Positions 44,789 through 58,042 of a stretch of 64,000 nucleotides of DNA are shown in pieces. Location of the stretch: IMG/VR virus record IMGVR_UViG_3300036944_001289, positions 62,001-126,000 of that record, one strand, 5' to 3'. The first letter of the stretch is position 1; the number at the start of each line of letters is the position of its first letter. A program made the position numbers and the translations under genes. Under the pieces are notes generated by a model. That model saw only the letters and a list, made by a program, of their open reading frames with translations, was not told the origin of the DNA and searched no databases.

Positions 44789-45505
44789 TTATACTGTTAA
44801 TAATTTACCAGTGTAAGCTTTGTATTTTTCTTTGAAGTACTTCTCTCCGGCTCTCCACTCTTCGGTAAACTCTCTGAGGCCTGGTGATTGATGTATTACT
44901 GGTAAATCGATTACACCTGTCTTGAGCTTTTTGATAGCAGCATCCATACTAAAGATGAGATCATAATAGTGAAATCTAGCTGGATTTTTTTCATCGAATC
45001 TCAAATCTCCAAGTTTTTTGAGATTAACACCAATAAACAAACCATCTATAAGAAGTGCTTGCTTATTTAGTGGTCCAAAAGATGTATACATATAATCATC
45101 TGGGGATCCATGACCAACACAACCAAGATGATCTTTTCTTTCTGACATAAGATGCCATAGCATAGGATTGTTATGATATCCGAAATTTGCTACTTTTGAT
45201 CCAGCTAGACCAATAACATCAAACTGTTCGAAACCTTTATAAATACGTTCAAGAAAATCTAAGCAATTTACAAATATATCATCATGCATAAAAATAGCAT
45301 GTGTATAACACTCTTTGAATGTCTCGACATAATTTATATGTCTATTATAAACAGATGCCAAACTTTCATTGTTCTGATATACCCATGAAATATGATGTCC
45401 AAATAGCCCATAAAAAATACTAGGTAAATTCTTTTCTAAACATTCACCTAAAATAGTATCACTTCTATCTTTATGTTTTGTTGCTACTACAAATTTTATA
45501 TTCAT
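44789..45505 (-). CDS. GT-A fold glycosyltransferase-like protein
   Basis: LASVYN, IFMHDD, VIGLAG, LIDGLFIG, FHYYD, VIHQSPG. Confidence 0.75.
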   Translation of the reverse strand: MNIKFVVATKHKDRSDTILGECLEKNLPSIFYGLFGHHISWVYQNNESLASVYNRHINYVETFKECYTHAIFMHDDIFVNCLDFLERIYKGFEQFDVIGLAGSKVANFGYHNNPMLWHLMSERKDHLGCVGHGSPDDYMYTSFGPLNKQALLIDGLFIGVNLKKLGDLRFDEKNPARFHYYDLIFSMDAAIKKLKTGVIDLPVIHQSPGLREFTEEWRAGEKYFKEKYKAYTGKLLTV

Positions 45506-45975
45506 TTTAAAATATGATTAAACTTACATTCAAACTCACAATCTTCACCACCAAATTCATTATACTTTCTACTAAACGGTTCACCTACTAATTTTTTATA
45601 AAACGCTATTCCTTCTACTGAATTTGAGTTAACATAAAAAGTACCACACCAAAGCTGACTGTCCTGCAGAGCTCGTTTCGTAAGCATTTTAGCTATACCT
45701 TGACCTTTAAACTTTTCATCTGTTACGATATAATAAGTTTTTAATGTGCAATTAGCTTTTGTATTACAAGTAAACGCGTGTAAACCTACTATTATATCAG
45801 TAGCTTCATAAAAAGCTACTAATATTGGAAATTCCTTCCACCACCCTCTTGTTTCCCATAAGTAACCAAAAGTATTCATAACAAAAGAGTCTGTGTTATT
45901 ATACATAAACTCCATTAGTTTATACTTTTGGTCTTGTGTATTAGGTGTTATATATTCAAGTCTAAATTTTGTCAT
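45502..45975 (-). CDS. GNAT-family acetyltransferase
   Basis: IVTDEKFKGQGIAKML (motif A) and N...IAFYKK (motif B). Confidence 0.8.
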   Translation of the reverse strand: MTKFRLEYITPNTQDQKYKLMEFMYNNTDSFVMNTFGYLWETRGWWKEFPILVAFYEATDIIVGLHAFTCNTKANCTLKTYYIVTDEKFKGQGIAKMLTKRALQDSQLWCGTFYVNSNSVEGIAFYKKLVGEPFSRKYNEFGGEDCEFECKFNHILK

Positions 45976-46634
45976 AGCTCTAGAAAAGGGGACTTACACT
46001 CAAAGCCACCAACTGGTTTGATACCTTTTTTAGTCATCCTATATAAGATACCTTCTTCTATTTTTTTAAACCCTTCTCCTGGTATAGAGGAAAAACTATT
46101 ATGATCATAGAATAGTGTACTACCTTGCCTTGCAAGGTATACATTTAGTGTTTTAATATTCATTATCCATAAACCAAATGTTCCTTGTAACATACTTAGT
46201 ACATATTCGATATTGAGTATTTCATTTGAAATAGTTGTGCATTTATCAAATCTATTTTCAAAAAGATCTAGTAATGCTGGTATTATACTAGTATCTACTA
46301 AATTATCGTGATCAGGTATATTCTCGTCTTTTAATTGCTTAAAGTTAGTTAACACCCCATTATGAGCGACGATCCAATTATTTTTTTCAAAAGGGTGACA
46401 ATTATGTAATTTCCATTTTCGCTCAAATGAAGTAGGTGCTTGATTGTGCCCTAAATATAGGAAGCCTTCTGGTAGTTTTATCGTATTCCAATCAAAACTA
46501 CCTTCTGTCTTTTGTATATCGTATGATTCACCATTAGTATAACATACTCCAGAAGCAAAATTCCCACGTTGCTTATTCGCCTCATCTAAAATTTCAAATT
46601 TATTCGTATTAAACGATCCAAATATGCCGCAAAT
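45972..46634 (-). CDS. Class II (Ntn) glutamine amidotransferase with non-canonical ATT start (220 aa)
   Basis: The frame extends 93 codons upstream of the ORF-track start to ATT-TGC-GGC-ATA-TTT-GGA = (M)CGIFG; RG, GH.QAPT, HPF, AHNG, VDT motifs; an in-frame TAG lies 4 codons upstream. Confidence 0.85.
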   Translation of the reverse strand: MCGIFGSFNTNKFEILDEANKQRGNFASGVCYTNGESYDIQKTEGSFDWNTIKLPEGFLYLGHNQAPTSFERKWKLHNCHPFEKNNWIVAHNGVLTNFKQLKDENIPDHDNLVDTSIIPALLDLFENRFDKCTTISNEILNIEYVLSMLQGTFGLWIMNIKTLNVYLARQGSTLFYDHNSFSSIPGEGFKKIEEGILYRMTKKGIKPVGGFECKSPFLEL

Positions 46635-46668: not shown

Positions 46669-46715
46669 ACTGAATGATATTAACTTATTTTTGGTTTTCA
46701 AGATTAAATAATAAT

Positions 46716-48539
46716 ATGAGTTTTACAAAATTAGGATGGGCTAACAAAGCAATTATAGGTTACAGTTTCTTACTCGAACAAGATGAAGAAATAAAACAAT
46801 CTACACCACCCGCACCGAGTGCTGAACTTTCACAGGATGCTATTATTGGTCCTATGTTAAAATTCATTCATCAAAAAATGTTGGCGTATATTAAGAAATC
46901 TCAAGAAGAAGGTAAGGCTGCTAAACTTACACCTTATAGAGATCGCTCTATTTATTTTTTACAATTTATTAAAGATAATTTCCCCGAGCTTGTTAATAAT
47001 AAATTAGCAGAGATTGAAAAAAAGAAGCCAAGAGAGAAGAGAGAGGGTGCACAAGACGTCACACCTATTGATGCTGAAGGTATTGTTCAAAAGAAGCGCA
47101 TTCCTTCTGCTACAGAAATTAACTGGTGGTTTGGAAATACTTTAAGAAGTTTACCAAATGGTAGAGAAGTTTATGATAAAGTAAAAAACGAGCTGATTGC
47201 AAAAACAGATAATAAATCAATACAGGACTATATTAACGTTACCGCAACCACGCGCGGTGAAAGATTTAAAATAGATGCTGGTTCTTTCTTACCTACTTCA
47301 GATATAACAACGGCTCTTGCTACACCTTTATCTGCATTTAAATCACCTGAAGAGAGATTCGAACAACAAATAACTGATGAGCCTCGTGTTAGTTTAGAGG
47401 AGATTAAGGATTTTCTTATACAAGCACTCGTAGCGTTTAAAGAAGATGAAAAAGGTGATCCGTATATTAGTGATGAAGTTAATGATGTAATATCTGGCGT
47501 ATATGGAAATGAAACTGCAGAAGATTTAGAAGGATATGTGACAAGTAAAGCTCGTAAATATAATAAATTAGCTCAACGTGGAGGTGACGCAGGTGCGAAA
47601 AAGTTGTATGAAATATTAAGCGATATTATCGAAAATTTCACACACTTTAAGCTCTTTGGTGTTTTAAGAACAACACCTGAAACATCGGATATTGCACTGG
47701 GTTCAATACAAGATATTAAGGATGATGTTGTTTATGGTATTGAAGACTTTAAAGAAAATAATGAAGAGTTTGCTGCAAGTTTTGATAAAATGATTGCAAA
47801 AATCGAAAATATGGATACAATATCTGAAATATTGACATATTTGGAAGGTCGTATAGAAGTATTACCTACACACAGTAACCCTACCATTCAAAGATTTGCA
47901 AAGAAGCTCGAAAGTATATACAATTCAATAAAAAATAAGATATCTACCGCTAAAAAGTTAAAAAGTGATGAATTGAGTGCTGTTGTATCACCTAGTAGTG
48001 AAATTAAATCAAAGGTAGAATTATCTACACCGTCTGAAGAAGATGTTGCGAATTCTTGGAAGAAGAACGAAGCTTTCGTGACTAATCTATTTAATATATT
48101 GAGGACATCAGGTGGTTCTTACCAAGCAGCAAAGTCAAAGATAGCCGATATGTCTAGTGACCGCACTAAACCTAAGAGAAATGAAAGAGGTGAGGTTGAG
48201 CTTGACGATAATGGCAATCCTATTGAAGTACCTGTAAAGAAAAACAAAATAGCTGTTGAGATGTTAGCTTGGTTAAATAATATCTCTTCAAAAATTGATG
48301 ATGCTGGTAGTATAATCACGAATCTATTTACCCGCTCGTATAATGAACAGGAGTTTTACGAAAACGGTAGTTCTCCTGAAAGATGGATTACCTATAGCAA
48401 ATTTGATACAGGTAGCGGCGACTATATCAATACCGAATCTGTAAAAATTACACCTAAACAGGTAAATAACCTTCTCGTTGAGAACTATCGCAATAGTATC
48501 AGAAAGAAGGTTATTGCTCAGCAAAGATATCTATATTAA
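46716..48539 (+). CDS. Large helical late protein (607 aa), candidate head-internal/ejected protein
   Basis: TAAATA-N5-ATG; N-terminal ...SFLLEQDEE; antisense insertion between queC and the GATase gene. Confidence 0.7.
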   Translation: MSFTKLGWANKAIIGYSFLLEQDEEIKQSTPPAPSAELSQDAIIGPMLKFIHQKMLAYIKKSQEEGKAAKLTPYRDRSIYFLQFIKDNFPELVNNKLAEIEKKKPREKREGAQDVTPIDAEGIVQKKRIPSATEINWWFGNTLRSLPNGREVYDKVKNELIAKTDNKSIQDYINVTATTRGERFKIDAGSFLPTSDITTALATPLSAFKSPEERFEQQITDEPRVSLEEIKDFLIQALVAFKEDEKGDPYISDEVNDVISGVYGNETAEDLEGYVTSKARKYNKLAQRGGDAGAKKLYEILSDIIENFTHFKLFGVLRTTPETSDIALGSIQDIKDDVVYGIEDFKENNEEFAASFDKMIAKIENMDTISEILTYLEGRIEVLPTHSNPTIQRFAKKLESIYNSIKNKISTAKKLKSDELSAVVSPSSEIKSKVELSTPSEEDVANSWKKNEAFVTNLFNILRTSGGSYQAAKSKIADMSSDRTKPKRNERGEVELDDNGNPIEVPVKKNKIAVEMLAWLNNISSKIDDAGSIITNLFTRSYNEQEFYENGSSPERWITYSKFDTGSGDYINTESVKITPKQVNNLLVENYRNSIRKKVIAQQRYLY

Positions 48540-49288
48540 TTTATATAAGGTATATCTCTACAACCTTTTTGTTTATAGACCTCATCAAGTCGTTCTTGTT
48601 GAACGTATTTGATGGGGTCTTTATATTTGGCTTCAATAAAACCTCTAAGTCTTAGACTACTCGAAGGTGTATCAGCATCGGCTAATTTATCTTCTCTATT
48701 CGAGTAGCAGGTCCAAGTCTTACTAAAATCCACACCGAGTCTAATACCTTCTTCAATGATTGATTTCTTACTCATCTCAATGAGAGGAGCTTCAATCTTT
48801 ATCTTTGATTTACGGTTTAGTGATATAAGATTATTAACTGAATTAATAAATTCCCCGCTACCATCCCAGTAGCCAGCTAGTGAGTCCGCTTCAGCAGCAC
48901 CATACCAAACAGTATCTGCACCTACGGACTCTGCATATGCAGAACATATAGATAAGAACATCAGATTTCTAAATGGAACGTATGATACGGGTTGAGCATC
49001 TCCTGCCATTTTCTTAACATTTGGATTATCAATATTAAGATTAGTAAGTGATGAAACTGGTGCGATATCTTTTATATACCTAACATCAAGTACTTTATTG
49101 GTAATTGTTACAGTATAAACATCTTGTAACATATTAGTATGGTGAGGTACGCACTCAAGTTCTCTAGAGTGTCTCTGACCATAATCAAAAGTTATAGTAT
49201 GTATTTCATTAAATCCCTGTGCTACTGCCATATACAGTAGCACTGTTGAATCTGCACCTCCACTAACTGTTAATACTAATTTACTCAT
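48536..49288 (-). CDS. queC: QueC-family (7-cyano-7-deazaguanine synthase-like) protein, divergent
   Basis: SGGADS, FDYGQRH..E, YVPFRN, APL...K..I, TWTCY; the CxxCxxC motif is absent. Confidence 0.85.
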   Translation of the reverse strand: MSKLVLTVSGGADSTVLLYMAVAQGFNEIHTITFDYGQRHSRELECVPHHTNMLQDVYTVTITNKVLDVRYIKDIAPVSSLTNLNIDNPNVKKMAGDAQPVSYVPFRNLMFLSICSAYAESVGADTVWYGAAEADSLAGYWDGSGEFINSVNNLISLNRKSKIKIEAPLIEMSKKSIIEEGIRLGVDFSKTWTCYSNREDKLADADTPSSSLRLRGFIEAKYKDPIKYVQQERLDEVYKQKGCRDIPYIN

Positions 49289-49297
49289 TTTATTAGA

Positions 49298-50410
49298 TTA
49301 CTTTTGTTCCGGTTCATCACCATCTTCAACCTCTGAAGGTACTTCAGTTTGTAGTTGTGAACCGTAAGACCACGCAATCTTCATTTTCTCTTCCATGCCA
49401 GGTAAGATAATCTTATTCCAGATGTCTTCATCTTTACCCCACTTAGAGAAGTATCCAAGCTTAGTACCATCAAGTAGCGAGTAAGTTGGTCCAGATTGGT
49501 TTATTACACCAAGCCCAACAGCTAATTCTACAAGCCCGTAGTATCTATCTAAACCAGTAGAGAATGACAAGAACATTTCACCTTCAAGATATTGCTTGAT
49601 AAATCTATTCTTTACTGTGAGAGCTCTCAGAATTACACCAGAATAGTTCTTTTGACCAGGTGCAAGCTTTGCATTTTCATTCTTACCGTCATCCTTTTGA
49701 GGTTTTCTTGCAAGCTGAATAGTTACTGATGGAAGATAGACTACTGATCGACCACCTGGCATATTCTTTTCTAGTGATGGATACATTGCCATTGGGTCAT
49801 CATAGACGTGATTGGTCATTACAATGGTCGTTTGGGTCATTGCACCAAGATTAGTACAAGTCTGCATTAGTGTTTTCATTGCACGTGCTTTGGTACCGGT
49901 ATCTTGAGATGTGCTTTCTTTTTCCATTCTGTTTATATCCATCTCAGACTGTAGATTGCCAAGGGAATCTATAACAATAAAGAATTTGCCATGCATTTTA
50001 GCTTCTCTTACGGAATTTAAGAACTTATAGATTGCATTTCTGGTTTGTTCAATCGTAATACAAGGTACGTATTTTACCTTTGAGATATCGAGACCTAGAC
50101 GTTGTGCACCTTCTGGGTCAATAGCGTTTTCTGTATCAAAAATAACAACCGTCATACCTTTTTTCTGTGCATTTGCAGCCATCTGCTGCACGAAAAAGGA
50201 TTTACCAGACATTGAAGGTCCAGCTAAAACTGTTACTCTTCCCTTTGGAATACCACCGTGTACTGAGCCGGATACAATCGCATTCAATACATAACTACCA
50301 GTGTCGATATACTCTTTTACTGTACTTAACGTATTATCATTAAGATAAGTTGCGAACGGATTGACACTATTAATCGATTCTAATACTTTTGAAATTTCTT
50401 TGTCTATCAT
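49298..50410 (-). CDS. uvsX: RecA-like recombinase
   Basis: DTGSYVLN, GPSMSGKS, FDTE, IDSLG, TNHVY, KNRF. Confidence 0.95.
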   Translation of the reverse strand: MIDKEISKVLESINSVNPFATYLNDNTLSTVKEYIDTGSYVLNAIVSGSVHGGIPKGRVTVLAGPSMSGKSFFVQQMAANAQKKGMTVVIFDTENAIDPEGAQRLGLDISKVKYVPCITIEQTRNAIYKFLNSVREAKMHGKFFIVIDSLGNLQSEMDINRMEKESTSQDTGTKARAMKTLMQTCTNLGAMTQTTIVMTNHVYDDPMAMYPSLEKNMPGGRSVVYLPSVTIQLARKPQKDDGKNENAKLAPGQKNYSGVILRALTVKNRFIKQYLEGEMFLSFSTGLDRYYGLVELAVGLGVINQSGPTYSLLDGTKLGYFSKWGKDEDIWNKIILPGMEEKMKIAWSYGSQLQTEVPSEVEDGDEPEQK

Positions 50411-50425
50411 AGATAAGCATTATAT

Positions 50426-50593
50426 CTATTTTTTGAGATCTTCAAGTAATAATTTTATCTTTTTACTGATATAATTATTTCTACCCTTGTGTTCTTCTAA
50501 AAATTTTATAACTTTATCGTATTTATATTGATACTCAGCTTTACCTTTTTCGTAAGCTTCTCTTATAGCTAAATCGTAATATATTTTATTCAT
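50426..50593 (-). CDS. Small hypothetical protein (55 aa; absent from ORF track)
   Basis: MNKIYYDLAIREAYEKGKAEYQYKYDKVIKFLEEHKGRNNYISKKIKLLLEDLKK*. Confidence 0.45.
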   Translation of the reverse strand: MNKIYYDLAIREAYEKGKAEYQYKYDKVIKFLEEHKGRNNYISKKIKLLLEDLKK

Positions 50594-50598
50594 TACAT

Positions 50599-50630
50599 AA
50601 AAAAGCCCTCTTTTTAAGAGGGCTTTTTTT
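50599..50630. terminator. Bidirectional intrinsic terminator
   Basis: AAAAAAGCCCTCTT-ttt-AAGAGGGCTTTTTTT. Confidence 0.85.
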
Positions 50631-50635
50631 ATTTT

Positions 50636-50998
50636 TTATTCAAAAAGCTTAATAACTTTAGGTTCTTCCGTTACTGGTGTCACCGGTTGAACGTTAAATG
50701 TACCTGATACAATTCTTTCGTATTGCGATGCAATCTTTTCATCAACTTCAAAATTAGAGCCTAAGGCTATAGAATTTAATGAGTATGTAAATTCAAAATT
50801 TCTCTTGTTAATTTCGCTATATTTAACGAATTCAGCAAAGAATAGAGGAACTAGTTGAATTTGCAATTGACCGTTAGCTGGTTGAACCGCAATCATTACA
50901 GGATTAACGACTGTTAATGTGCCTTCTTGTTTACTCGGTGCGCTGATACCTAGAATATTTCTACCTACTTGATCTATGAATGTAATATATTTAGACAT
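50636..50998 (-). CDS. Hypothetical protein (possible Sm-like fold)
   Basis: GRNILG...LTVVNPVMI...QIQLVP...IASQYERI; has its own promoter and terminator. Confidence 0.6.
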   Translation of the reverse strand: MSKYITFIDQVGRNILGISAPSKQEGTLTVVNPVMIAVQPANGQLQIQLVPLFFAEFVKYSEINKRNFEFTYSLNSIALGSNFEVDEKIASQYERIVSGTFNVQPVTPVTEEPKVIKLFE

Positions 50999-51028
50999 AT
51001 ATGTATATTATATTATAATAAGAGATTT

Positions 51029-53608
51029 TCAACTGAATAAATCAAATAAATTAGTTTGAACAATAGAACCTGGCCGTTGTAATTCCCATCTGACATTTTC
51101 ATATAGTCTTTCTACAGCTGCGAGTACAGTCTTTTCAAAGATTAATTCGTAGTCTGGCTGAAAGATCTGTTTAAATTCTTCAGGGTAGTAGTATTTATAA
51201 GCAATTTTTTCGATATTATATTTGTTAGGTGTCTGTAGTTGTAATAATCTAACTTTATCACCGGATGATATCTTTTCGTATTTGTTAGTTAACTGTAGCT
51301 TTTCAATAAGTCTATTATAAAATATTGCTGCTTTAATATGATGCGGTGTACCTTTGGCTATTTCGAAACCATTACTGAGTTGTTCTCTTGCTTCATAATT
51401 ATTTAGATTACTAACCGTTGCAATAGATTCGATCGGTAGTGTCTTAAATATCTCCCACACGTTATTAATTGATATATTCGTTTTAGAATAATCCTGAGTA
51501 GAGAGCATCGTTTCAATTATATCTTTAATATAAGGTTTAACAGCAGATGGTATTGTACTACGTACAACATCTACACCTACGTATTTGTATTTATTACAAG
51601 GTATTTCTTCAATATCTAAGACATGTATTATATATCTTTTCTTCTGTAAGAAGATACCGGTATCAGCTATTGCTTCTCTTTTAAATACAAACCTACTATC
51701 TTCTGAGAATAATTCACGTTCACCCCATACTTTTATTTCGTTATTGAGCATATCACCTAGCTCTTTTACTTTATCGTAAAACTCTTTACTAATCTTGCCA
51801 GGTTTGTTAGAAAATATTACACCGTTTTGTACAATATTATCTAAAGTAAGATAAATAGAATCTGTATCGCCATATACTACGATATCATTATTATCTTGCT
51901 CTGTTATATTTGGTACATTCTCTTTTACGAACTTTTTAGCAACCTCTCCTGCAAATTTAATTACTTCTTGACCGGTTAAGGTTACAGATGAGGCTATATC
52001 GTCGTCACCTAATGGATTGTTTTTGTTACCAAATGCACCATAAGTTGCATTAATATATATCTTTTGAGCCAATTGCTTAGAGTCTAATTGAACACTCTCG
52101 TTCTTTAGATTATTATACTCTTCGCATTCTGTTTGATTTAGTTCTTCTAATTCTTTAATACGAAGTTTTACTTTCTTAAGTTTAGCTTGCGTCTTTTTAC
52201 GCTCCTTGTAGTAATAATCTAATACCTCAGGAAATATACCACGCTTTTTCTGTGTGAATATAATATTTGCCTTACTTATAGTAAGTCTCTCCTTTTGTAT
52301 AAAAAGAGCAAACTTGTCTTCAGTAAGTGTAAATGTTTGACCTGTAACGTGTCGTATTACCACATTACCATCTTCTCGTTTAATTATTTTACCTATCTTT
52401 GTCTCTGGTGATGTATTTAGAGTAATCATCACATTAGGATATAGAGAGTTAGCGTCAAATGATACTATATGCTTTTTAAATCCAGGTAATGGTTCACGAA
52501 CAAACGCACCGGGGTTAACGCCACTCTCTACATTGCGTATAAATGTAGGCAGTATTTGATTCTTATGTTTAGCGCGTATTGCTGCTGCTCCATTTATAAC
52601 TGATATAGAACCCATTGCTGCTTCAAATGTAGTTAGTCCTATATATGCAAACATTCTCACTAGGTTTAAATATCTTAGTTTGAACTCAAGGTTCTTAAGT
52701 AGTCTTACGTCTTGAATATTGTACTCTACAAACTTCTGCCAATTTTCATTGTATAGATCTATTAGATTACCTGTACCAATATCTACCTTTGATTCACCTA
52801 GTTCTAATTTAGCAATACTGTTTAGCTTGTAACTCTCTTTTTCACCTGGTGAGAACCTCTTATATATGTCAAGATAATCTATAAGAGATACACCTTCTAT
52901 AAACCAGCGCTGCAAGTCTTGACCTTTATCGTTGTGTATTTCACGGAAGTACGTTTTACCTGCTGGTGATAAACTATTACGTGTATTATCACCAAAAAGG
53001 TTTTGTACCCTATTCATGATATATGGAATATCGAATCCCATACTATTCCATCCACTTACAATATCGGGTGGATCAGATTTAAACCAATCTATAAACTTAG
53101 TAAGTAATTCTACTTCATTTTTACAATATATAAAGTCTACATCACTATCGACTACATTAAAAGGTTTTTCGCCCCAGCATATAAATCTCTTTGTAGTTGA
53201 ATCATATATAGTAATGACATTGATAGGGTATTTCGAATATCTTGCGTCAGGAAACTCTTCTGCAATAACTTCAATGTCAATAAATACTACTCTTACATCA
53301 TTTTTACTAAAGTCGGGTGTTTCGTTATCTTTATAGAATCGCTCTATAAGAAACTGTTGAACACATGGAAAATTATCGAATACTCTTGTTATACCTGTAT
53401 TGGTGATAAAAGAGCTTCTGTCAAATTGAGTATTAAATATACGTTTAACTAGCTTAGTACCGAATATTGAATCATATTCACCAGGACCTTCTATATAGAG
53501 GTGGGGTTTATAGGTAAAATCTTGTACATTTCTTTTACCATTTTCATCCCACCCTAATATAGTTATCTTCTGTTCTTTGCTGTTATAAAAAGCGTTCCTA
53601 TAACTCAT
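51029..53608 (-). CDS. gp43: Family B DNA polymerase
   Basis: IDIE, GWNSMGFD, YNIQDV, SFDANSLYP, KIYINATYG, YGDTDS, KKRY. Confidence 0.97.
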   Translation of the reverse strand: MSYRNAFYNSKEQKITILGWDENGKRNVQDFTYKPHLYIEGPGEYDSIFGTKLVKRIFNTQFDRSSFITNTGITRVFDNFPCVQQFLIERFYKDNETPDFSKNDVRVVFIDIEVIAEEFPDARYSKYPINVITIYDSTTKRFICWGEKPFNVVDSDVDFIYCKNEVELLTKFIDWFKSDPPDIVSGWNSMGFDIPYIMNRVQNLFGDNTRNSLSPAGKTYFREIHNDKGQDLQRWFIEGVSLIDYLDIYKRFSPGEKESYKLNSIAKLELGESKVDIGTGNLIDLYNENWQKFVEYNIQDVRLLKNLEFKLRYLNLVRMFAYIGLTTFEAAMGSISVINGAAAIRAKHKNQILPTFIRNVESGVNPGAFVREPLPGFKKHIVSFDANSLYPNVMITLNTSPETKIGKIIKREDGNVVIRHVTGQTFTLTEDKFALFIQKERLTISKANIIFTQKKRGIFPEVLDYYYKERKKTQAKLKKVKLRIKELEELNQTECEEYNNLKNESVQLDSKQLAQKIYINATYGAFGNKNNPLGDDDIASSVTLTGQEVIKFAGEVAKKFVKENVPNITEQDNNDIVVYGDTDSIYLTLDNIVQNGVIFSNKPGKISKEFYDKVKELGDMLNNEIKVWGERELFSEDSRFVFKREAIADTGIFLQKKRYIIHVLDIEEIPCNKYKYVGVDVVRSTIPSAVKPYIKDIIETMLSTQDYSKTNISINNVWEIFKTLPIESIATVSNLNNYEAREQLSNGFEIAKGTPHHIKAAIFYNRLIEKLQLTNKYEKISSGDKVRLLQLQTPNKYNIEKIAYKYYYPEEFKQIFQPDYELIFEKTVLAAVERLYENVRWELQRPGSIVQTNLFDLFS

Positions 53609-55112: not shown

Positions 55113-55982
55113 TTAAAATATTAAGAAATCAAATTTATAACCGTTTTCTTCTACACATTTCTTTTTTGCTAAATTTCTTTCCAAATCAATTTTAAATGTG
55201 TATTCACTTTTAACTTCAATTATTCTTTTTTCTTTAATTATAAAAATATCTGGATAATATCTATGCTCTTTACCATTATATGTATACGTAAAGGGAGGCA
55301 TGTTACATTTACCTGTTTCGATATCATCTTCTGTATAACCTTTAGCTAATAATAAATTAATTGCTTTATTTTCATAGCCTTGTGTTTTAAATTCCTTCTC
55401 TCCTACTATAAATGTTTTTATAGAAAAAGCGCTATTTTGTTGTTTTTCAAAATACTCTGCAACTTGCATAGGGTTAATAACTCCATACTCTTCTTTAAAT
55501 TTTTCTTGATATCTCTTTATTAATTCACCCCAACCATTATATTTTAATATAATGGTCTGTTTAAACAATTCGTTAGTAACATTTTTATAATTATATTGTT
55601 CTTTTCTGTTTCTTTTTTTAATACCATTTTCATTTAAAACTCTAATAATAACACAATTATCTACGCTGTATTTTTTGGATACATAATTGACACCCTTACC
55701 GTTGGAATACTCCTGAATAATATCTTTTATCTCATCTTCTGTAAATTTTTTGTAAATTGTATTGTTTCTTTTTTCATTATATCTTAATATGTTTCTGGAT
55801 TCTTTTTTATTACGTAACGAAACACCGTTTTTAATTATTATTTCTCTAATTACAGATACATTAACGGCATATAGGTTAGCAAGTTCTGACGCTGAGTAAC
55901 CTTCAATATAATTTATTATAATTTCTTTAGCTTTACCTTTTGTATTTTGATGCCTACTTTCATAAACAATATCTATGTTCAT
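55113..55982 (-). CDS. Free-standing PD-(D/E)XK endonuclease with HTH repeats (paralogue of 32565-33587)
   Basis: YGVINPMQ, QGYE, YYPDIF...IIEVKS; TAAATA-N5-ATG. Confidence 0.78.
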   Translation of the reverse strand: MNIDIVYESRHQNTKGKAKEIIINYIEGYSASELANLYAVNVSVIREIIIKNGVSLRNKKESRNILRYNEKRNNTIYKKFTEDEIKDIIQEYSNGKGVNYVSKKYSVDNCVIIRVLNENGIKKRNRKEQYNYKNVTNELFKQTIILKYNGWGELIKRYQEKFKEEYGVINPMQVAEYFEKQQNSAFSIKTFIVGEKEFKTQGYENKAINLLLAKGYTEDDIETGKCNMPPFTYTYNGKEHRYYPDIFIIKEKRIIEVKSEYTFKIDLERNLAKKKCVEENGYKFDFLIF

Positions 55983-56017
55983 ATATATATTTATTGTTTT
56001 GGTTATTGTATTCTTAA

Positions 56018-58042
56018 TTAATCAACAAAGTTTACACGTTTTGTTATTCCGTTATGCTTTTCAAGAAAGATTATATCTCCGTTTACAGCTTTTACACTCT
56101 CTTTTCTATGCGAGATAATTAAAATAGATTCTTTAAACGTTTCTACTCTTTCTTTTAGAATATCTACTACTAGCTCTACACCACGTTGGTCTAAGCTGGT
56201 ATCAAATAGTTCATCATATACAGTTACATTATAGTATACATCTCCGTGAGTCTTTCTCATATCAATAAATGAGAAAAGACATGCTAAATCAATAGCTTTT
56301 CTTTCTGCACCAGAGAAGTTATTATAAAGGCATATCTTACCTTTTTCGTTTAATATCTCTTCTTCAAAATACTCGTTAAATATGCATATACTATTACTAT
56401 CTAGCTTCTTGAGGTAGAATGCTAATTTTGCGTTAAAGTTTTGTAGAATTTTCTTTACTAGGAAACTCTTTACACCTTCTTCACTTATTACAAACTTTAC
56501 AACCTCAAGCATATCAGCTTTCTTTTTAAGACTTTGAATTGTATTATTGGATGTTTCTATCTTTGTATTTGCCTCTTTTATTAATTCATCAAAAGTCGTG
56601 ACATCGTTTGATATAGTTATGCTACCTTCTTGTAACTGTTTATTTAAATTCTGTAAATCTGTAATTCTTTTCTTATTTGACTGTCTTGTAGTTTCTTGCA
56701 CTGCTGCAAGCTTTATATCTTTATTAAGACTATCTATGTGTTTCTTTATTTTGGACTTTTTATCTTCTAAACCATTTGCCTCTTTTACATATGCAGATAA
56801 TGTCTCTACTAATTTTAGCACATCGTTATGCATATTTTTCTTTTCTTTTTCTATCTCCTCTATATCGTGTTCTGATATTGGACGTAAGCATGTAGGGCAA
56901 ATCTGTTCAGTAGTACCTACTTTTTGTAATTGCTCTTTTTTGGTTTTGATTTCGTTTTTTACTGTTGCTACATTTCCAAGTGTCTGATTGCATAGTTCTT
57001 CTACCTTAACCAAAGCCTTAGTATATTTTTCTAATTCTGTATTCTTTTCAGTCTGATTTATTATAACTTCATTTTGAATATCAGTTTCAATCTTTTGTAT
57101 CTCTGCCTCGTTATCTTTGATTTTTTTATTAATCGCTAATATCTTGGTCTCTTTTTCTTTAGACTTTAACTCCTTTTGCTTTTCAAAGGCAGATACACTG
57201 TTTTTAATTTCACTAAGTCTGGCATTTTCTATGTCTAGTTCTCTCTTTGTGCTGTTTTGGTCTTCTCTAAGAGAAGACATCATTGCAGAGAAAACCTGCA
57301 AATTGAATATTTGTTCAATAAACTTTCTTTTCTCTACTTTAGACTTTGACATGAAAGGTAGAGTATCATTTAATGTCATCAGTACACAATTTCTAAATAC
57401 TTCAGGTGATGATGATAGTACAGTTTCAATATACGAATTTGTATTTGCAATAGTATCTAATGTTATATCATTACCATCTTTATAAAGAAACAATCTAGAC
57501 GGTGATAATGTTCTTATTATGTTGTATGTGTTTGTATTACCGTTTTGATTAACATCGAATTCTAATTGCACTTCGCATGTATTTTGAGTTATATTGTTTG
57601 ATATAAACTCTTTCTTAAGTTCTCTTAATGTAGTACCAAATATAGCAAAGTATAATGCATCTGCTATAGTGGAATTGTGTGATGTAATACCGTTACTATA
57701 ATATTCCTTAACGTTTCTAACTTGCAAATCATATAAATTTTTAAATAAATTAGTACCTCTTACGTATTTTATAGTTTCACAACCGTCCTTTGTATGAACA
57801 ATTTCATTTACATTTAAATGTTGAACCTTTACAAACTCTACACCTGTAAATACTCTATGGTTACCTGAACATTTAAGGTTTTTTCCGGCATCAGTTTCAA
57901 TTTCATAAACTTGTTCATTGTATGCTGTTACATCTGCTTCATCGATAGGGTTAAACCCAAATCTTGTCTCTACATCAATATGACCTTTATATTGAGGATA
58001 TACTTTATAAAAATCAGCTATTTGTTTTACAGTAGCTTTCAT
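56018..58042 (-). CDS. gp46: gp46 (Rad50/SbcC) C-terminal precursor: 123-aa IntC plus C-extein
   Basis: Intein block B CSGNH, block F LYDLQV, block G YYSNGITSHN|S; then STIADAL, CPTC zinc hook, FSGAE signature, YDE, IISH. Confidence 0.92.
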   Translation of the reverse strand: MKATVKQIADFYKVYPQYKGHIDVETRFGFNPIDEADVTAYNEQVYEIETDAGKNLKCSGNHRVFTGVEFVKVQHLNVNEIVHTKDGCETIKYVRGTNLFKNLYDLQVRNVKEYYSNGITSHNSTIADALYFAIFGTTLRELKKEFISNNITQNTCEVQLEFDVNQNGNTNTYNIIRTLSPSRLFLYKDGNDITLDTIANTNSYIETVLSSSPEVFRNCVLMTLNDTLPFMSKSKVEKRKFIEQIFNLQVFSAMMSSLREDQNSTKRELDIENARLSEIKNSVSAFEKQKELKSKEKETKILAINKKIKDNEAEIQKIETDIQNEVIINQTEKNTELEKYTKALVKVEELCNQTLGNVATVKNEIKTKKEQLQKVGTTEQICPTCLRPISEHDIEEIEKEKKNMHNDVLKLVETLSAYVKEANGLEDKKSKIKKHIDSLNKDIKLAAVQETTRQSNKKRITDLQNLNKQLQEGSITISNDVTTFDELIKEANTKIETSNNTIQSLKKKADMLEVVKFVISEEGVKSFLVKKILQNFNAKLAFYLKKLDSNSICIFNEYFEEEILNEKGKICLYNNFSGAERKAIDLACLFSFIDMRKTHGDVYYNVTVYDELFDTSLDQRGVELVVDILKERVETFKESILIISHRKESVKAVNGDIIFLEKHNGITKRVNFVD
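57674..58042 (-). mobile_element. Split intein C-fragment (IntC, 123 aa)
   Basis: Ends in HN followed by Ser+1; contains block B, so the split site is atypical. Confidence 0.9.

What the first reader, a model, noticed from the sequence alone, without database searches (positions are those of the whole stretch)
48536..49288. QueC with a remodelled active site: Zn-binding cysteines lost
Seen: the PP-loop SGGADS, YGQRH and VPFRN motifs are intact. The C-terminal metal site reads TWTCYSNREDKLADADTPSSSLRLRG instead of TxxCY...CGxCxxCxxR, and GYPDCR reads GYWDGS. Known: canonical QueC binds Zn through four Cys; only the first remains here. Inference: this is a Zn-independent clade or an enzyme with a different substrate or product (e.g. 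an amide rather than a nitrile). The intact ORF argues against simple decay.
Basis: partly seen in the sequence, partly recalled or inferred. Interest (0 to 1): 0.62.

Follow-up and report, generated by a model that had tools for sequence, protein, structure and literature searches.

The report
Zinc-site-less QueC of aquatic phages
A 209-kb T4-like phage carries a QueC enzyme that has swapped three of its four zinc-holding cysteines for Asp, Thr and Ser, yet the new version is tightly conserved in many related phages and sits in a complete preQ1 DNA-modification pathway, so it is most likely a working zinc-independent QueC, not a decayed or re-purposed one.

Summary
ORF 48536-49288(-) is a 250-aa QueC with every catalytic motif intact. 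Zn ligands 2-4 are replaced: Cys to D204, T207 and S210. YPDC reads YWDG.

It is not private decay. All 120 listed metagenomic relatives (63-95% identical) and at least 78 of 80 viral contigs share the Cys-less loop. The loop is more conserved than the rest of the protein.

In a tree, the Zn-less proteins form one clade. Its sister is a phage clade that keeps all four Cys, also has YWDG, and shares the same gene order. Other QueC lineages lost the site independently.

The complete genome also encodes FolE2, QueD, QueE, a bona fide nitrile reductase QueF and a DpdA3 DNA transglycosylase. QueF and DpdA3 occur with both the Zn-less and the Zn-retaining QueC. A free-standing class-II glutamine amidotransferase (45972-46634, ATT start) follows QueC throughout the group.

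Best reading: a Zn-independent but otherwise ordinary preQ0 (nitrile) synthase, probably glutamine-fed, supplying dPreQ1-type DNA modification.

"Amide instead of nitrile" is not. This is a new variant of a known enzyme, of moderate interest.

The parts
48536..49288 (-). QueC-family PP-loop ATPase, 250 aa, Zn-site-less variant
   Evidence: Pfam QueC E 1.4e-51. TIGR00364 153.2 bits against a cut-off of 150.3. AF2 model pLDDT 93.3. Best Foldseek matches are QueC 2PG3 and 3BL5.
49247..49264 (-). PP-loop SGGADS (residues 9-14)
   Evidence: S9, G10, G11, D13 and S14 are invariant in 121 clade sequences.
49160..49183 (-). YGQRHSRE (residues 36-43), equivalent to the YxQxHxxE motif
   Evidence: Invariant Y36, Q38, H40 and E43. 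Y35 of E. coli QueC is essential (PMC13329287).
48965..48979 (-). VPFRN (residues 104-108)
   Evidence: Invariant. R99 of E. coli QueC is essential (PMC13329287).
48857..48874 (-). GYWDGS (residues 139-144), a variant of the YPDC motif
   Evidence: Y140 and D142 are kept; Pro is replaced by Trp and Cys by Gly. The Zn-retaining sister clade shares this variant.
48641..48718 (-). Former Zn-knuckle loop, residues 191-216. C194 and Y195 are kept. Zn ligands 2-4 are replaced by D204, T207 and S210.
   Evidence: Column mapping. 18 of 27 loop positions are at least 99% invariant, against 79 of 219 elsewhere. Loop codons show 10-12 synonymous against 3-7 non-synonymous differences.
48560..48601 (-). 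C-terminal helix specific to the Zn-less clade (residues 230-243: Q230, Q231, Y238, C243)
   Evidence: Y238 is present in 13 of 13 Zn-less rows and is a gap in the sister clade. Q231 is present in 12 of 13. AF2 predicts a helix at 231-240.
45972..46634 (-). Free-standing class-II (Ntn) glutamine amidotransferase, 220 aa, with an ATT start directly before the nucleophile Cys
   Evidence: The frame and sequence read ...TAT ATT TGC GGC..., with AAGGAAGG 12 nt upstream. GATase_6 E 1.5e-5. Relatives start ATG-TGC or ATT-TGC. Found in 13 of 14 QueC-bearing viral contigs, usually immediately after QueC. Weak homology to the Gat part of phage Gat-QueC proteins.
46674..48539 (+). 621-aa ORF of unknown function on the opposite strand, lying between QueC and the GATase
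   Evidence: Missing at this place in the relatives, where the GATase is the next matched gene after QueC in 15 of 16 loci that cover it. No Pfam family; one weak PHROG hit.
45502..45975 (-). GNAT acetyltransferase, overlapping the GATase stop
   Evidence: Acetyltransf_7 E 2.4e-6. Not found at this position in relatives.
44789..45505 (-). Glycosyltransferase-like gene (Glyco_tranf_2_5), a conserved third member of the QueC-GATase-GT trio
   Evidence: Pfam E 3.3e-9. Follows the GATase in all 16 related loci that reach that far.
49298..53608 (-). Replication-module neighbours: UvsX/RecA (49298-50410), ORF120 (50636-50998), PolB (51029-53608)
   Evidence: RecA E 5e-22. PolB hits T4-like cyanophages at about 30% identity. 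The order ORF349-PolB-ORF120-UvsX-QueC-GATase-GT-DnaB is conserved.

Best explanation
The gene encodes a functional QueC (7-cyano-7-deazaguanine, preQ0, synthase) whose C-terminal structural zinc knuckle has been replaced by a metal-free polar loop. Cys ligands 2-4 became Asp204, Thr207 and Ser210, and the first Cys-Tyr pair is kept. A new C-terminal helix probably stabilises the loop. The enzyme still adenylates 7-carboxy-7-deazaguanine and converts it through the amide to the nitrile. Ammonia is probably delivered by the free-standing class-II glutamine amidotransferase that accompanies QueC throughout this phage group. The phage's own QueF then reduces preQ0 to preQ1, and a DpdA3-type transglycosylase puts that base, or a further derivative, into phage DNA. 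Shown here: the sequence state, its conservation and selection, its phylogenetic position, the fold, and the pathway genes. Inferred: the activity, the absence of metal, the GATase partnership and the final DNA base.
For: (1) All catalytic motifs, and the four residues proven essential in E. coli QueC, are kept (PMC13329287).
(2) The Cys-less loop is nearly invariant across 121 proteins of 63-95% identity, and occurs in at least 78 of 80 viral contigs. Loop codons differ by 10-12 synonymous against 3-7 non-synonymous changes; the rest of the gene shows about 70 against about 80.
(3) In a tree built without the Zn-site columns, the query lies in a 13-row, all-Zn-less clade (SH-aLRT 95). Its sister (88) is a 9-row clade (95) with four Cys and the same YWDG motif.
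(4) Both clades share the gene order PolB-UvsX-QueC-GATase-GT-DnaB.
(5) The complete 209-kb genome encodes FolE2 (E 1e-69), QueD, QueE, DpdA3 and a bimodular QueF. DpdA3 scores phmmer E 9.5e-10 to phiST CGPG_00065 and is 46% identical to the CP220 homologue. QueF scores E 1.4e-43 to V. cholerae QueF and keeps the catalytic Cys and the ESKSxKLY NADPH motif.
(6) QueF and DpdA3 co-occur with Zn-retaining QueC (G005, G008, G010) and with Zn-less QueC (G001, G015 which is 93% complete, G016, G026).
(7) The AF2 model has pLDDT 93.3, with 86-97 over the loop. The top structural matches are QueC 2PG3 and 3BL5.
Against: No biochemical or genetic test exists for any member of this clade. The Zn motif is called a hallmark of the family, and Zn is said to be required for QueC function (PMC13329287). 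Activity without it is therefore an inference from conservation and context. The strict E. coli-type equivalog model NF008317 is far below its cut-off (119 against 378 bits), and TIGR00364 passes only narrowly. YPDC is altered to YWDG. The host could in principle supply preQ0 for QueF. The GATase partnership rests on conserved adjacency and on the existence of fusions elsewhere. The complex prediction gave no verdict. C46, C194 and C243 are conserved cysteines, and I could not examine their geometry, so a relocated metal site is not excluded.
Confidence: 0.6

Rival explanations
1. The remodelled enzyme stops at the amide: it is an ADG (7-amido-7-deazaguanine) synthase.
For: Phage QueC homologues proposed to make ADG exist (QueC* of Campylobacter phages; PMC10516641). 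This phage's DpdA3 is 46% identical to the CP220 one, and CP220 DNA is 100% dADG. YPDC is altered.
Against: CP220 QueC* keeps all four Cys. It differs instead in the YGQRH motif, which reads YGSNH there, whereas the query has the canonical YGQRH..E. A motif-complete QueF nitrile reductase is encoded and conserved at 55-73% identity in relatives; it would have no substrate if the pathway stopped at the amide. The Zn-retaining sister clade has the same context.
Confidence: 0.1
2. QueC plus the adjacent GATase are a split version of Gat-QueC. Together they make the archaeosine base (G+, 7-formamidino-7-deazaguanine) for DNA, as in phage 9g.
For: The GATase is found with QueC in 13 of 14 contigs, mostly immediately downstream. 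Its only hits in cultured phages are Gat-QueC fusions annotated as archaeosine synthase, and a 'nucleophile aminohydrolase' directly after QueC in Vibrio phage 2.275.O. Phage 9g Gat-QueC makes dG+ (PMC6884629).
Against: QueF with an intact NADPH motif and catalytic Cys points to reduction of preQ0, not amidination. The gene order is QueC then GATase, the reverse of the fusions. Similarity to the Gat domain is weak (27% over 124 aa, E 5e-5). The complex prediction gave no verdict.
Confidence: 0.12
3. The loss of the Zn site is an adaptation to zinc scarcity, part of a zinc-sparing rebuild of the whole pathway. This would explain why the site was lost, and it is compatible with the best explanation.
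For: This genome uses the Zn-independent GTP cyclohydrolase FolE2 instead of FolE. Under Zn starvation, FolE, QueD2 and QueC are the under-metalated steps of the queuosine pathway in A. baumannii (PMC12458113). folE2 is Zur-regulated in many bacteria, and queC and queF are in the N. meningitidis Zur regulon (PMC6103462). Among related contigs, FolE2 was found only with Zn-less QueC (3 of 21, plus this genome and its near-identical copy G001) and never with Zn-retaining QueC (0 of 11 sister-clade contigs, four of which carry FolE).
Against: 10 of 21 Zn-less contigs carry the Zn-dependent FolE-IA, including the 93%-complete G015, so the two changes are not coupled. The numbers are too small for significance. 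This phage comes from a shale-gas metagenome, not an open-ocean one. QueD keeps a Cys/His motif.
Confidence: 0.2
4. A metal is still bound, by a rewired site (for example C194 with D204 or the conserved C46/C243), so the enzyme is not metal-free.
For: C194 is invariant although its three partner ligands are gone. C46 and C243 are invariant in the 121 close relatives. D204 could ligate a metal.
Against: C46 and C243 are also present in much of the Zn-retaining sister clade, so they are not replacements. Other Zn-less QueC lineages have lost even the first Cys (TWTSY). Thr and Ser are poor Zn ligands. C194 precedes the essential Tyr (Y189 in E. coli), and that alone may explain why it is kept.
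Confidence: 0.1
5. Simple decay: a pseudogene or relic private to this genome.
For: None, beyond the missing cysteines.
Against: The ORF is intact. There are 1670 word-search hits, and the top 120 all carry the Cys-less loop. The loop is under purifying selection.
Confidence: 0.01

Closest known systems
Canonical QueC (preQ0 synthase; B. subtilis 3BL5, Pectobacterium 2PG3, E. coli P0AG67)
   Same: Same fold: these are the top Foldseek hits, at 29-30% identity. It shares the PP-loop, YxQxHxxE, VPxRN, the Tyr and Asp of YPDC, the conserved Lys, and the Cys-Tyr pair at the start of the knuckle. queD and queE are in the same genome.
   Different: Zn ligands 2-4 are Asp, Thr and Ser. YPDC reads YWDG. 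There is a C-terminal tail about 25 residues longer, with a clade-specific helix. A GATase gene accompanies it. It is encoded inside a phage replication module.
QueC of phages with DpdA3 plus QueF (e.g. [quoted passage not shown]
   Same: The same pathway set: DpdA3, GTP cyclohydrolase, QueD, QueE, QueC, QueF. The sister clade has the same synteny, the same YWDG motif, the same GATase neighbour and 44-54% identity.
   Different: Those proteins keep the four-Cys knuckle (ACGxCTAC). No DpdN-type formyltransferase or DpdM (DUF3109) was found here.
Gat-QueC (class-II GATase fused N-terminally to QueC; phage 9g, Crenarchaeota)
   Same: A class-II Ntn amidotransferase is functionally tied to a QueC module. 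The GATase here is weakly homologous to the Gat part of phage Gat-QueC.
   Different: Here there are two separate genes in the order QueC then GATase. QueF is present, so the expected product is preQ0/preQ1 rather than G+.
QueC* (proposed ADG synthase of Campylobacter phages, CP220 CPT_0114)
   Same: A phage QueC homologue next to the DNA polymerase gene, in a genome with DpdA3.
   Different: CP220 QueC* keeps the four Cys, has YGSNH instead of YGQRH, and is only 26-27% identical. CP220 has no QueF match.
Cap9 and QatC (QueC-family protein deazaguanylases of CBASS type IV and QatABCD)
   Same: The same PP-loop fold. Cap9 (9NTO) is the fourth Foldseek hit.
   Different: Both keep a Cys-rich Zn motif and sit in defence operons (PMC13329287). 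The query has the full canonical QueC motif set and a biosynthetic, replication-module context. It has no CD-NTase or QatABD neighbours.

Membership tests
QueC (PF06508 cluster 1, preQ0 synthase) | Significant match to the family models | tested here: met
   PF06508 E 1.4e-51. TIGR00364 153.2 bits against a cut-off of 150.3, which is narrow. NF008317, the E. coli-type equivalog, 119 against 378 bits, not reached.
QueC (PF06508 cluster 1, preQ0 synthase) | SGGxDS PP-loop | tested here: met
   SGGADS at residues 9-14, invariant in the clade.
QueC (PF06508 cluster 1, preQ0 synthase) | YxQxHxxE and VPxRN motifs (Y35 and R99 are essential in E. coli) | tested here: met
   YGQRHSRE at 36-43 and VPFRN at 104-108.
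QueC (PF06508 cluster 1, preQ0 synthase) | YPDC motif (Y131 essential) | tested here: inconclusive
   The motif reads YWDG. The essential Tyr and the Asp are kept; Pro and Cys are replaced. The same variant is common in Zn-retaining QueC representatives.
QueC (PF06508 cluster 1, preQ0 synthase) | C(x)8CxxCxxC zinc-binding motif | tested here: not met
   Only the first Cys (C194) remains. Ligands 2-4 are D204, T207 and S210. It is therefore filed as a Zn-less variant within the homologous family, not as a canonical member.
QueC (PF06508 cluster 1, preQ0 synthase) | Essential Tyr after the first Cys (Y189), and the conserved Lys (K165) | tested here: met
   Y195 and K174 are invariant in a 44-sequence alignment.
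QueC (PF06508 cluster 1, preQ0 synthase) | Genomic association with queD and queE | tested here: met
   QueD (G000 132837-133469) and QueE (G000 134560-135330) are in the same complete genome, about 22 kb away and not in one operon.
QueC (PF06508 cluster 1, preQ0 synthase) | ATP-dependent conversion of CDG to preQ0 | not testable with these tools
   Needs an enzyme assay or complementation.
Gat-QueC | Class-II GATase domain fused N-terminally to the QueC domain | tested here: not met
   QueC is a 250-aa single-domain protein. The GATase is a separate 220-aa gene downstream.
QueC* (ADG synthase, Campylobacter phages) | Close sequence kinship to CP220 CPT_0114, in a pathway that ends before preQ0 (no QueF) | tested here: not met
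   26-27% identity to CPT_0114 and a different motif state. QueF is present here.
Cap9 / QatC protein deazaguanylases | Defence-operon context (CD-NTase, or QatA/B/D), with remodelled or minimal motifs | tested here: not met
   The neighbours are UvsX, PolB, DnaB, the GATase and a glycosyltransferase. The full canonical motif set is present.
DpdA3-type 7-deazaguanine DNA modification system (whole pathway) | A DpdA3 transglycosylase plus preQ0/preQ1 synthesis genes in one phage genome | tested here: met
   DpdA3 at G000 159722-160585. FolE2, QueD, QueE, QueC and QueF are also present. The modified base itself is not testable here.

The most novel reading that the evidence does not exclude
The Zn-less QueC, the free-standing Ntn amidotransferase and the always-adjacent glycosyltransferase-like gene form a conserved three-gene unit. 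This unit makes a so far undescribed 7-deazaguanine derivative: neither preQ0/preQ1, ADG nor G+. DpdA3 then installs it at every G of a widespread group of about 200-kb aquatic T4-like phages. On this reading the loss of the Zn knuckle reflects a changed reaction or a new protein-protein interface.
Probability: 0.12. Interest if true: 0.8.

Novelty: new variant of a known kind. Interest (0 to 1): 0.5.

Why it matters
QueC is described as a zinc enzyme, and its four-Cys knuckle is treated as a hallmark of the family.

A large phage clade, under purifying selection, does without three of the four ligands while keeping every catalytic residue and the full pathway context. That is a natural experiment suggesting the zinc is structural and dispensable.

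The clade also comes with a ready-made control: the Zn-retaining sister clade, 44-54% identical, has the same neighbours. The pair can be used to test what the zinc does.

The finding also shows that these abundant, uncultured phages of about 200 kb carry a complete DpdA3/QueF pathway. They therefore probably have DNA in which G is replaced by a preQ1-type base. This affects how their DNA behaves in restriction, sequencing and metagenomic recovery.

Finally, the conserved QueC-GATase pairing suggests a glutamine-dependent route to preQ0 that has not been characterised. Annotation pipelines that accept only ATG, GTG and TTG starts will miss or truncate the GATase.

Tried and rejected
(1) Complex prediction of QueC with the GATase: score 0.14, no verdict. 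It is not evidence either way.

(2) Pfam TGT (PF01702) and DUF6610 (PF20314) searches for a DpdA were blank. PF01702 is also blank on CP220, which has a DpdA3. That blank therefore had no power. DpdA3 was found instead with the phiST CGPG_00065 protein.

(3) Idea that Zn loss marks the ADG-forming QueC*: rejected, because CP220 QueC* keeps four Cys.

(4) Idea that GYWDGS is part of the same remodelling: rejected, because the Zn-retaining sister clade shares it.

(5) Idea of a strictly coupled Zn-sparing pathway (Zn-less QueC always with FolE2): not supported. 10 of 21 Zn-less contigs have FolE-IA, and only 3 of 21 have FolE2.

(6) Idea that QueD has lost its Zn site (the motif reads HGY, not HGH). 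The same motif is in the QueD of phage phiST, whose DNA is fully dDG-modified, so this was not pursued as a defect.

(7) P0261 was taken at first for a Gat-QueC. Its N-terminal part shows no similarity to the GATase; its best local match contains a DGVRSxD-type stretch like those of the AAA_28-type proteins.

(8) Scan of 185,579 species genomes for close relatives: only 33-35% identical canonical QueC were found. No cellular source of the Zn-less form was found.

(9) Literature searches found no description of a Zn-less QueC. The 2026 family survey does not mention one.

(10) DpdN-like formyltransferase (PF00551) and DpdM (PF11307): absent from the genome.

Not done: read laying was not used. 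The model coordinates are not exposed, so I could not measure distances among C46, C194, C243, D204, T207 and S210. No alternative genetic code was used; ATT is a table-11 start.
Full report
**What is there.** The window is bases 62001-126000 of a 209,282-bp IMG/VR virus record with direct terminal repeats, judged complete. G+C content is about 31%. The replication genes are T4-like: PolB, UvsX and DnaB. The only runs that hold the stretch in full are two shale-gas metagenomes, and these may be its source.

ORF 48536-49288(-) encodes 250 aa. It matches Pfam QueC at E 1.4e-51 and passes the TIGR00364 equivalog narrowly (153.2 bits against 150.3). It fails the E. coli-type model NF008317.

- SGGADS at residues 9-14
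- YGQRHSRE at 36-43
- VPFRN at 104-108
- GYWDGS at 139-144
- a loop at 191-216 with a single cysteine, C194

Alignment to B. subtilis QueC (3BL5) and a 76-sequence alignment place D204, T207 and S210 exactly in the columns of zinc ligands 2, 3 and 4.

**Not decay, and not private.**
- A word search found 1670 relatives. The 120 listed (63-95% identical; several also appear in Tara data) all carry the same Cys-less loop.
- At least 78 of the 80 best viral contigs found with a clade profile carry it too. For the other two my pattern caught a wrong frame.
- The loop is the best-conserved part of the protein. 18 of its 27 positions are at least 99% invariant, against 79 of 219 elsewhere.
- In five pairwise codon comparisons the loop shows 10-12 synonymous against 3-7 non-synonymous differences. 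The rest of the gene shows roughly 70 against 80.

**Where it sits in the family.** The exhaustive search gave 6601 cluster representatives at E<=0.001. I used it because the claim concerns the limits of a clade.

A motif table of the best 150 representatives shows that nearly all keep four Cys. A few other lineages lack them: P0125, P0129, P0130, P0134, P0137, P0154 and P0175. Some of these have lost even the first Cys.

I built a maximum-likelihood tree with the Zn-site columns left out. It puts the query in a 13-row clade that is entirely Zn-less (SH-aLRT 95). This clade is sister (88) to a 9-row clade (95) of phage proteins that keep a four-Cys knuckle of the ACGxCTAC type. The tree needs four changes of state, and at least two are forced by well-supported branches. 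It was a quick search, so stars deserve some caution. Identity levels (44-54%) and synteny agree with it.

The YPDC to YWDG change is shared with the four-Cys sister clade and with many other four-Cys representatives. It is therefore older than the zinc loss and independent of it.

What is specific to the Zn-less clade is a remodelled C-terminal tail with invariant Q231 and Y238. The model predicts it as a helix at 231-240. I infer, but cannot show, that this helix packs on the former knuckle.

**Fold.** An AlphaFold2 model from a 44-sequence alignment has mean pLDDT 93.3 and pTM 0.91, with 86-97 over the loop. Foldseek ranks QueC structures 2PG3 and 3BL5 first and Cap9 next.

**Pathway context.** The genome has the whole route. 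All of these genes except QueC lie outside the window.

| Gene | G000 coordinates | Evidence |
|---|---|---|
| FolE2 (GCYH-IB) | 129140-129925 | E 1e-69 |
| QueD | 132837-133469 | |
| QueE | 134560-135330 | |
| QueC | in the window | see above |
| DpdA3 transglycosylase | 159722-160585 | |
| Bimodular QueF | 161154-162074 | QueF_N 3e-31, QueF 3e-23 |

There is no FolE-IA.

DpdA3 scores phmmer E 9.5e-10 to phiST CGPG_00065, is 46% identical over 261 aa to the CP220 homologue, and matches phrog_19058 at 2e-57. The Pfam TGT model cannot see this subfamily, even in CP220.

QueF aligns to V. cholerae QueF at E 1.4e-43. The catalytic Cys, the QPDWG Asp and the ESKSxKLY NADPH motif are all in place (residue roles from general knowledge of QueF).

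QueF's substrate is the nitrile preQ0. QueF and DpdA3 are found together in four-Cys genomes (G005, the complete G008, G010) and in Zn-less ones (G001, G015 at 93% completeness, G016, G026). The other contigs are fragments that do not reach that region.

The same pathway around both forms of QueC is the main argument that the two forms do the same job. I found no DpdN-type formyltransferase or DpdM. The expected base is therefore dPreQ1 or an undescribed derivative.

**The amidotransferase.** The 127-aa ORF at 45972-46355 is the tail of a 220-aa class-II (Ntn) glutamine amidotransferase. The frame is open back to an ATT codon at 46634-46632, directly before the nucleophile Cys (I/M-CGIFG). A Shine-Dalgarno-like AAGGAAGG lies 12 nt upstream.

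Relatives begin ATG-TGC, or again ATT-TGC behind AGGAGG. The gene is present in 13 of 14 QueC-bearing viral contigs, usually starting within a few bases of the QueC stop. A glycosyltransferase-like gene and DnaB always follow it.

The order ORF349-PolB-ORF120-UvsX-QueC-GATase-GT-DnaB holds in both clades. In this genome a 621-aa ORF on the other strand and a GNAT gene have been inserted.

The GATase's only matches in cultured phages are Gat-QueC fusions and a 'nucleophile aminohydrolase' directly after QueC in Vibrio phage 2.275.O. I therefore infer a two-subunit, glutamine-using QueC. The complex prediction gave no verdict.

**Comparison with the literature.**
- The 2026 survey of PF06508 names SGGxDS and C(x)8CxxCxxC as the two hallmark motifs. 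It shows that Y35, R99, Y131 and Y189 are essential in E. coli, and it does not describe a Zn-less QueC (PMC13329287). All four essential residues are kept here.
- The proposed amide-forming QueC* of Campylobacter phage CP220 keeps its four Cys and differs elsewhere (PMC10516641).
- Phages with DpdA3, QueC and QueF are known to replace all G by a preQ1 derivative (PMC10516641).

Targeted searches found no paper on a zinc-free QueC.

**Why the zinc was lost.** A zinc-economy explanation is attractive. FolE, QueD2 and QueC are the under-metalated steps under Zn starvation in A. baumannii (PMC12458113). FolE2 is the classic Zur-regulated, Zn-independent substitute for FolE (PMC6103462). This genome has FolE2.

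The coupling is loose, however. Among 21 larger Zn-less contigs, 10 carry FolE-IA and 3 carry FolE2, and none carries both. Four four-Cys contigs carry FolE-IA and none carries FolE2. I keep this as a minority hypothesis.

**Verdict.** "Different product" is not supported. The most likely reading is an isofunctional, metal-free preQ0 synthase, fed by a partner amidotransferase, in a DpdA3/QueF DNA-modification pathway. It belongs to the QueC homologous family but fails one hallmark feature. I therefore file it as a new variant of a known kind, of moderate interest, with a clear experimental path.

Noticed in passing
window 45972-46634 (-): The class-II glutamine amidotransferase starts at an ATT codon directly before its nucleophile Cys. 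ORF callers that accept only ATG, GTG and TTG report a 127-aa fragment. Three related contigs (L049, L055, L060) also use ATT, behind AGGAGG. The others use ATG.
   Followed up: yes
window 44789-45505 (-), and related loci L028-L060: A glycosyltransferase-like gene (Glyco_tranf_2_5, E 3e-9) follows the GATase in all 16 related loci that reach that far. QueC-GATase-GT is therefore a conserved trio inside the replication module. Its role, which could be further modification of the DNA base, is unknown.
   Followed up: partly
window 46674-48539 (+) and 45502-45975 (-): A 621-aa ORF without family matches lies on the opposite strand, and a GNAT acetyltransferase lies next to the GATase. Both are insertions specific to this genome, between or beside QueC and the GATase.
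   Followed up: partly
G000 160582-161151 and 137266-138093 (outside the window; L019:14582-15151, L003:11266-12093): Two AAA_28 / thymidylate-kinase-like P-loop proteins. One sits between DpdA3 and QueF. CP220 has homologues, one of them next to its DpdA3 (CP220 ORF 55493-56035). In the metagenomic protein P0261, a 217-aa N-terminal part unrelated to the GATase precedes the QueC domain; its best local match contains a DGVRSxD-type stretch like those of these AAA_28 proteins. This hints at a kinase step tied to 7-deazaguanine metabolism.
   Followed up: partly
G000 162102-163489 (L019:16102-17489): Two ORFs directly after QueF, of 195 aa and 267 aa. The second matches phrog_17104, which has unknown function. 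Neither has a Pfam family. They are candidates for further modification enzymes.
   Followed up: no
G000 129140-129925 (L071:1501-2286, -): FolE2 (GCYH-IB) is present instead of FolE. In related phage contigs FolE and FolE2 are mutually exclusive. The phage FolE2 is 62-76% identical to proteins on contigs of 290-680 kb, which are likely cellular. This suggests a fairly recent capture from a host.
   Followed up: partly
G000 132837-133469 (L003:6837-7469): QueD carries CxxxHGY instead of the canonical CxxxHGH, plus a low-complexity tail of about 60 aa. The QueD of Cellulophaga phage phiST, whose DNA is fully dDG, has the same HGY. The closest solved structure is 7V0F, a 200-aa CPH4 synthase.
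   Followed up: partly
G000 about 138400-146000 (L003:12461-19429): A run of about nine glycosyltransferase- or methyltransferase-like genes downstream of QueE. I recognised them by eye from the translations only.
   Followed up: no
proteins P0136, P0138, P0235: These are QueC homologues of 545-594 aa. P0136 and P0235 carry intein-like insertions of more than 100 to about 350 aa inside the Zn-knuckle loop; P0138 has a normal loop, and I did not locate its extra length.
   Followed up: no
FN667788 (CP220) 100966-104404; window 48536-53608: In Campylobacter phage CP220 the QueC homologue lies directly before the DNA polymerase gene, as QueC lies near PolB here. The two phages also share DpdA3 at 46% identity. 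A 7-deazaguanine/replication gene linkage is therefore shared by distant T4-like phages.
   Followed up: partly
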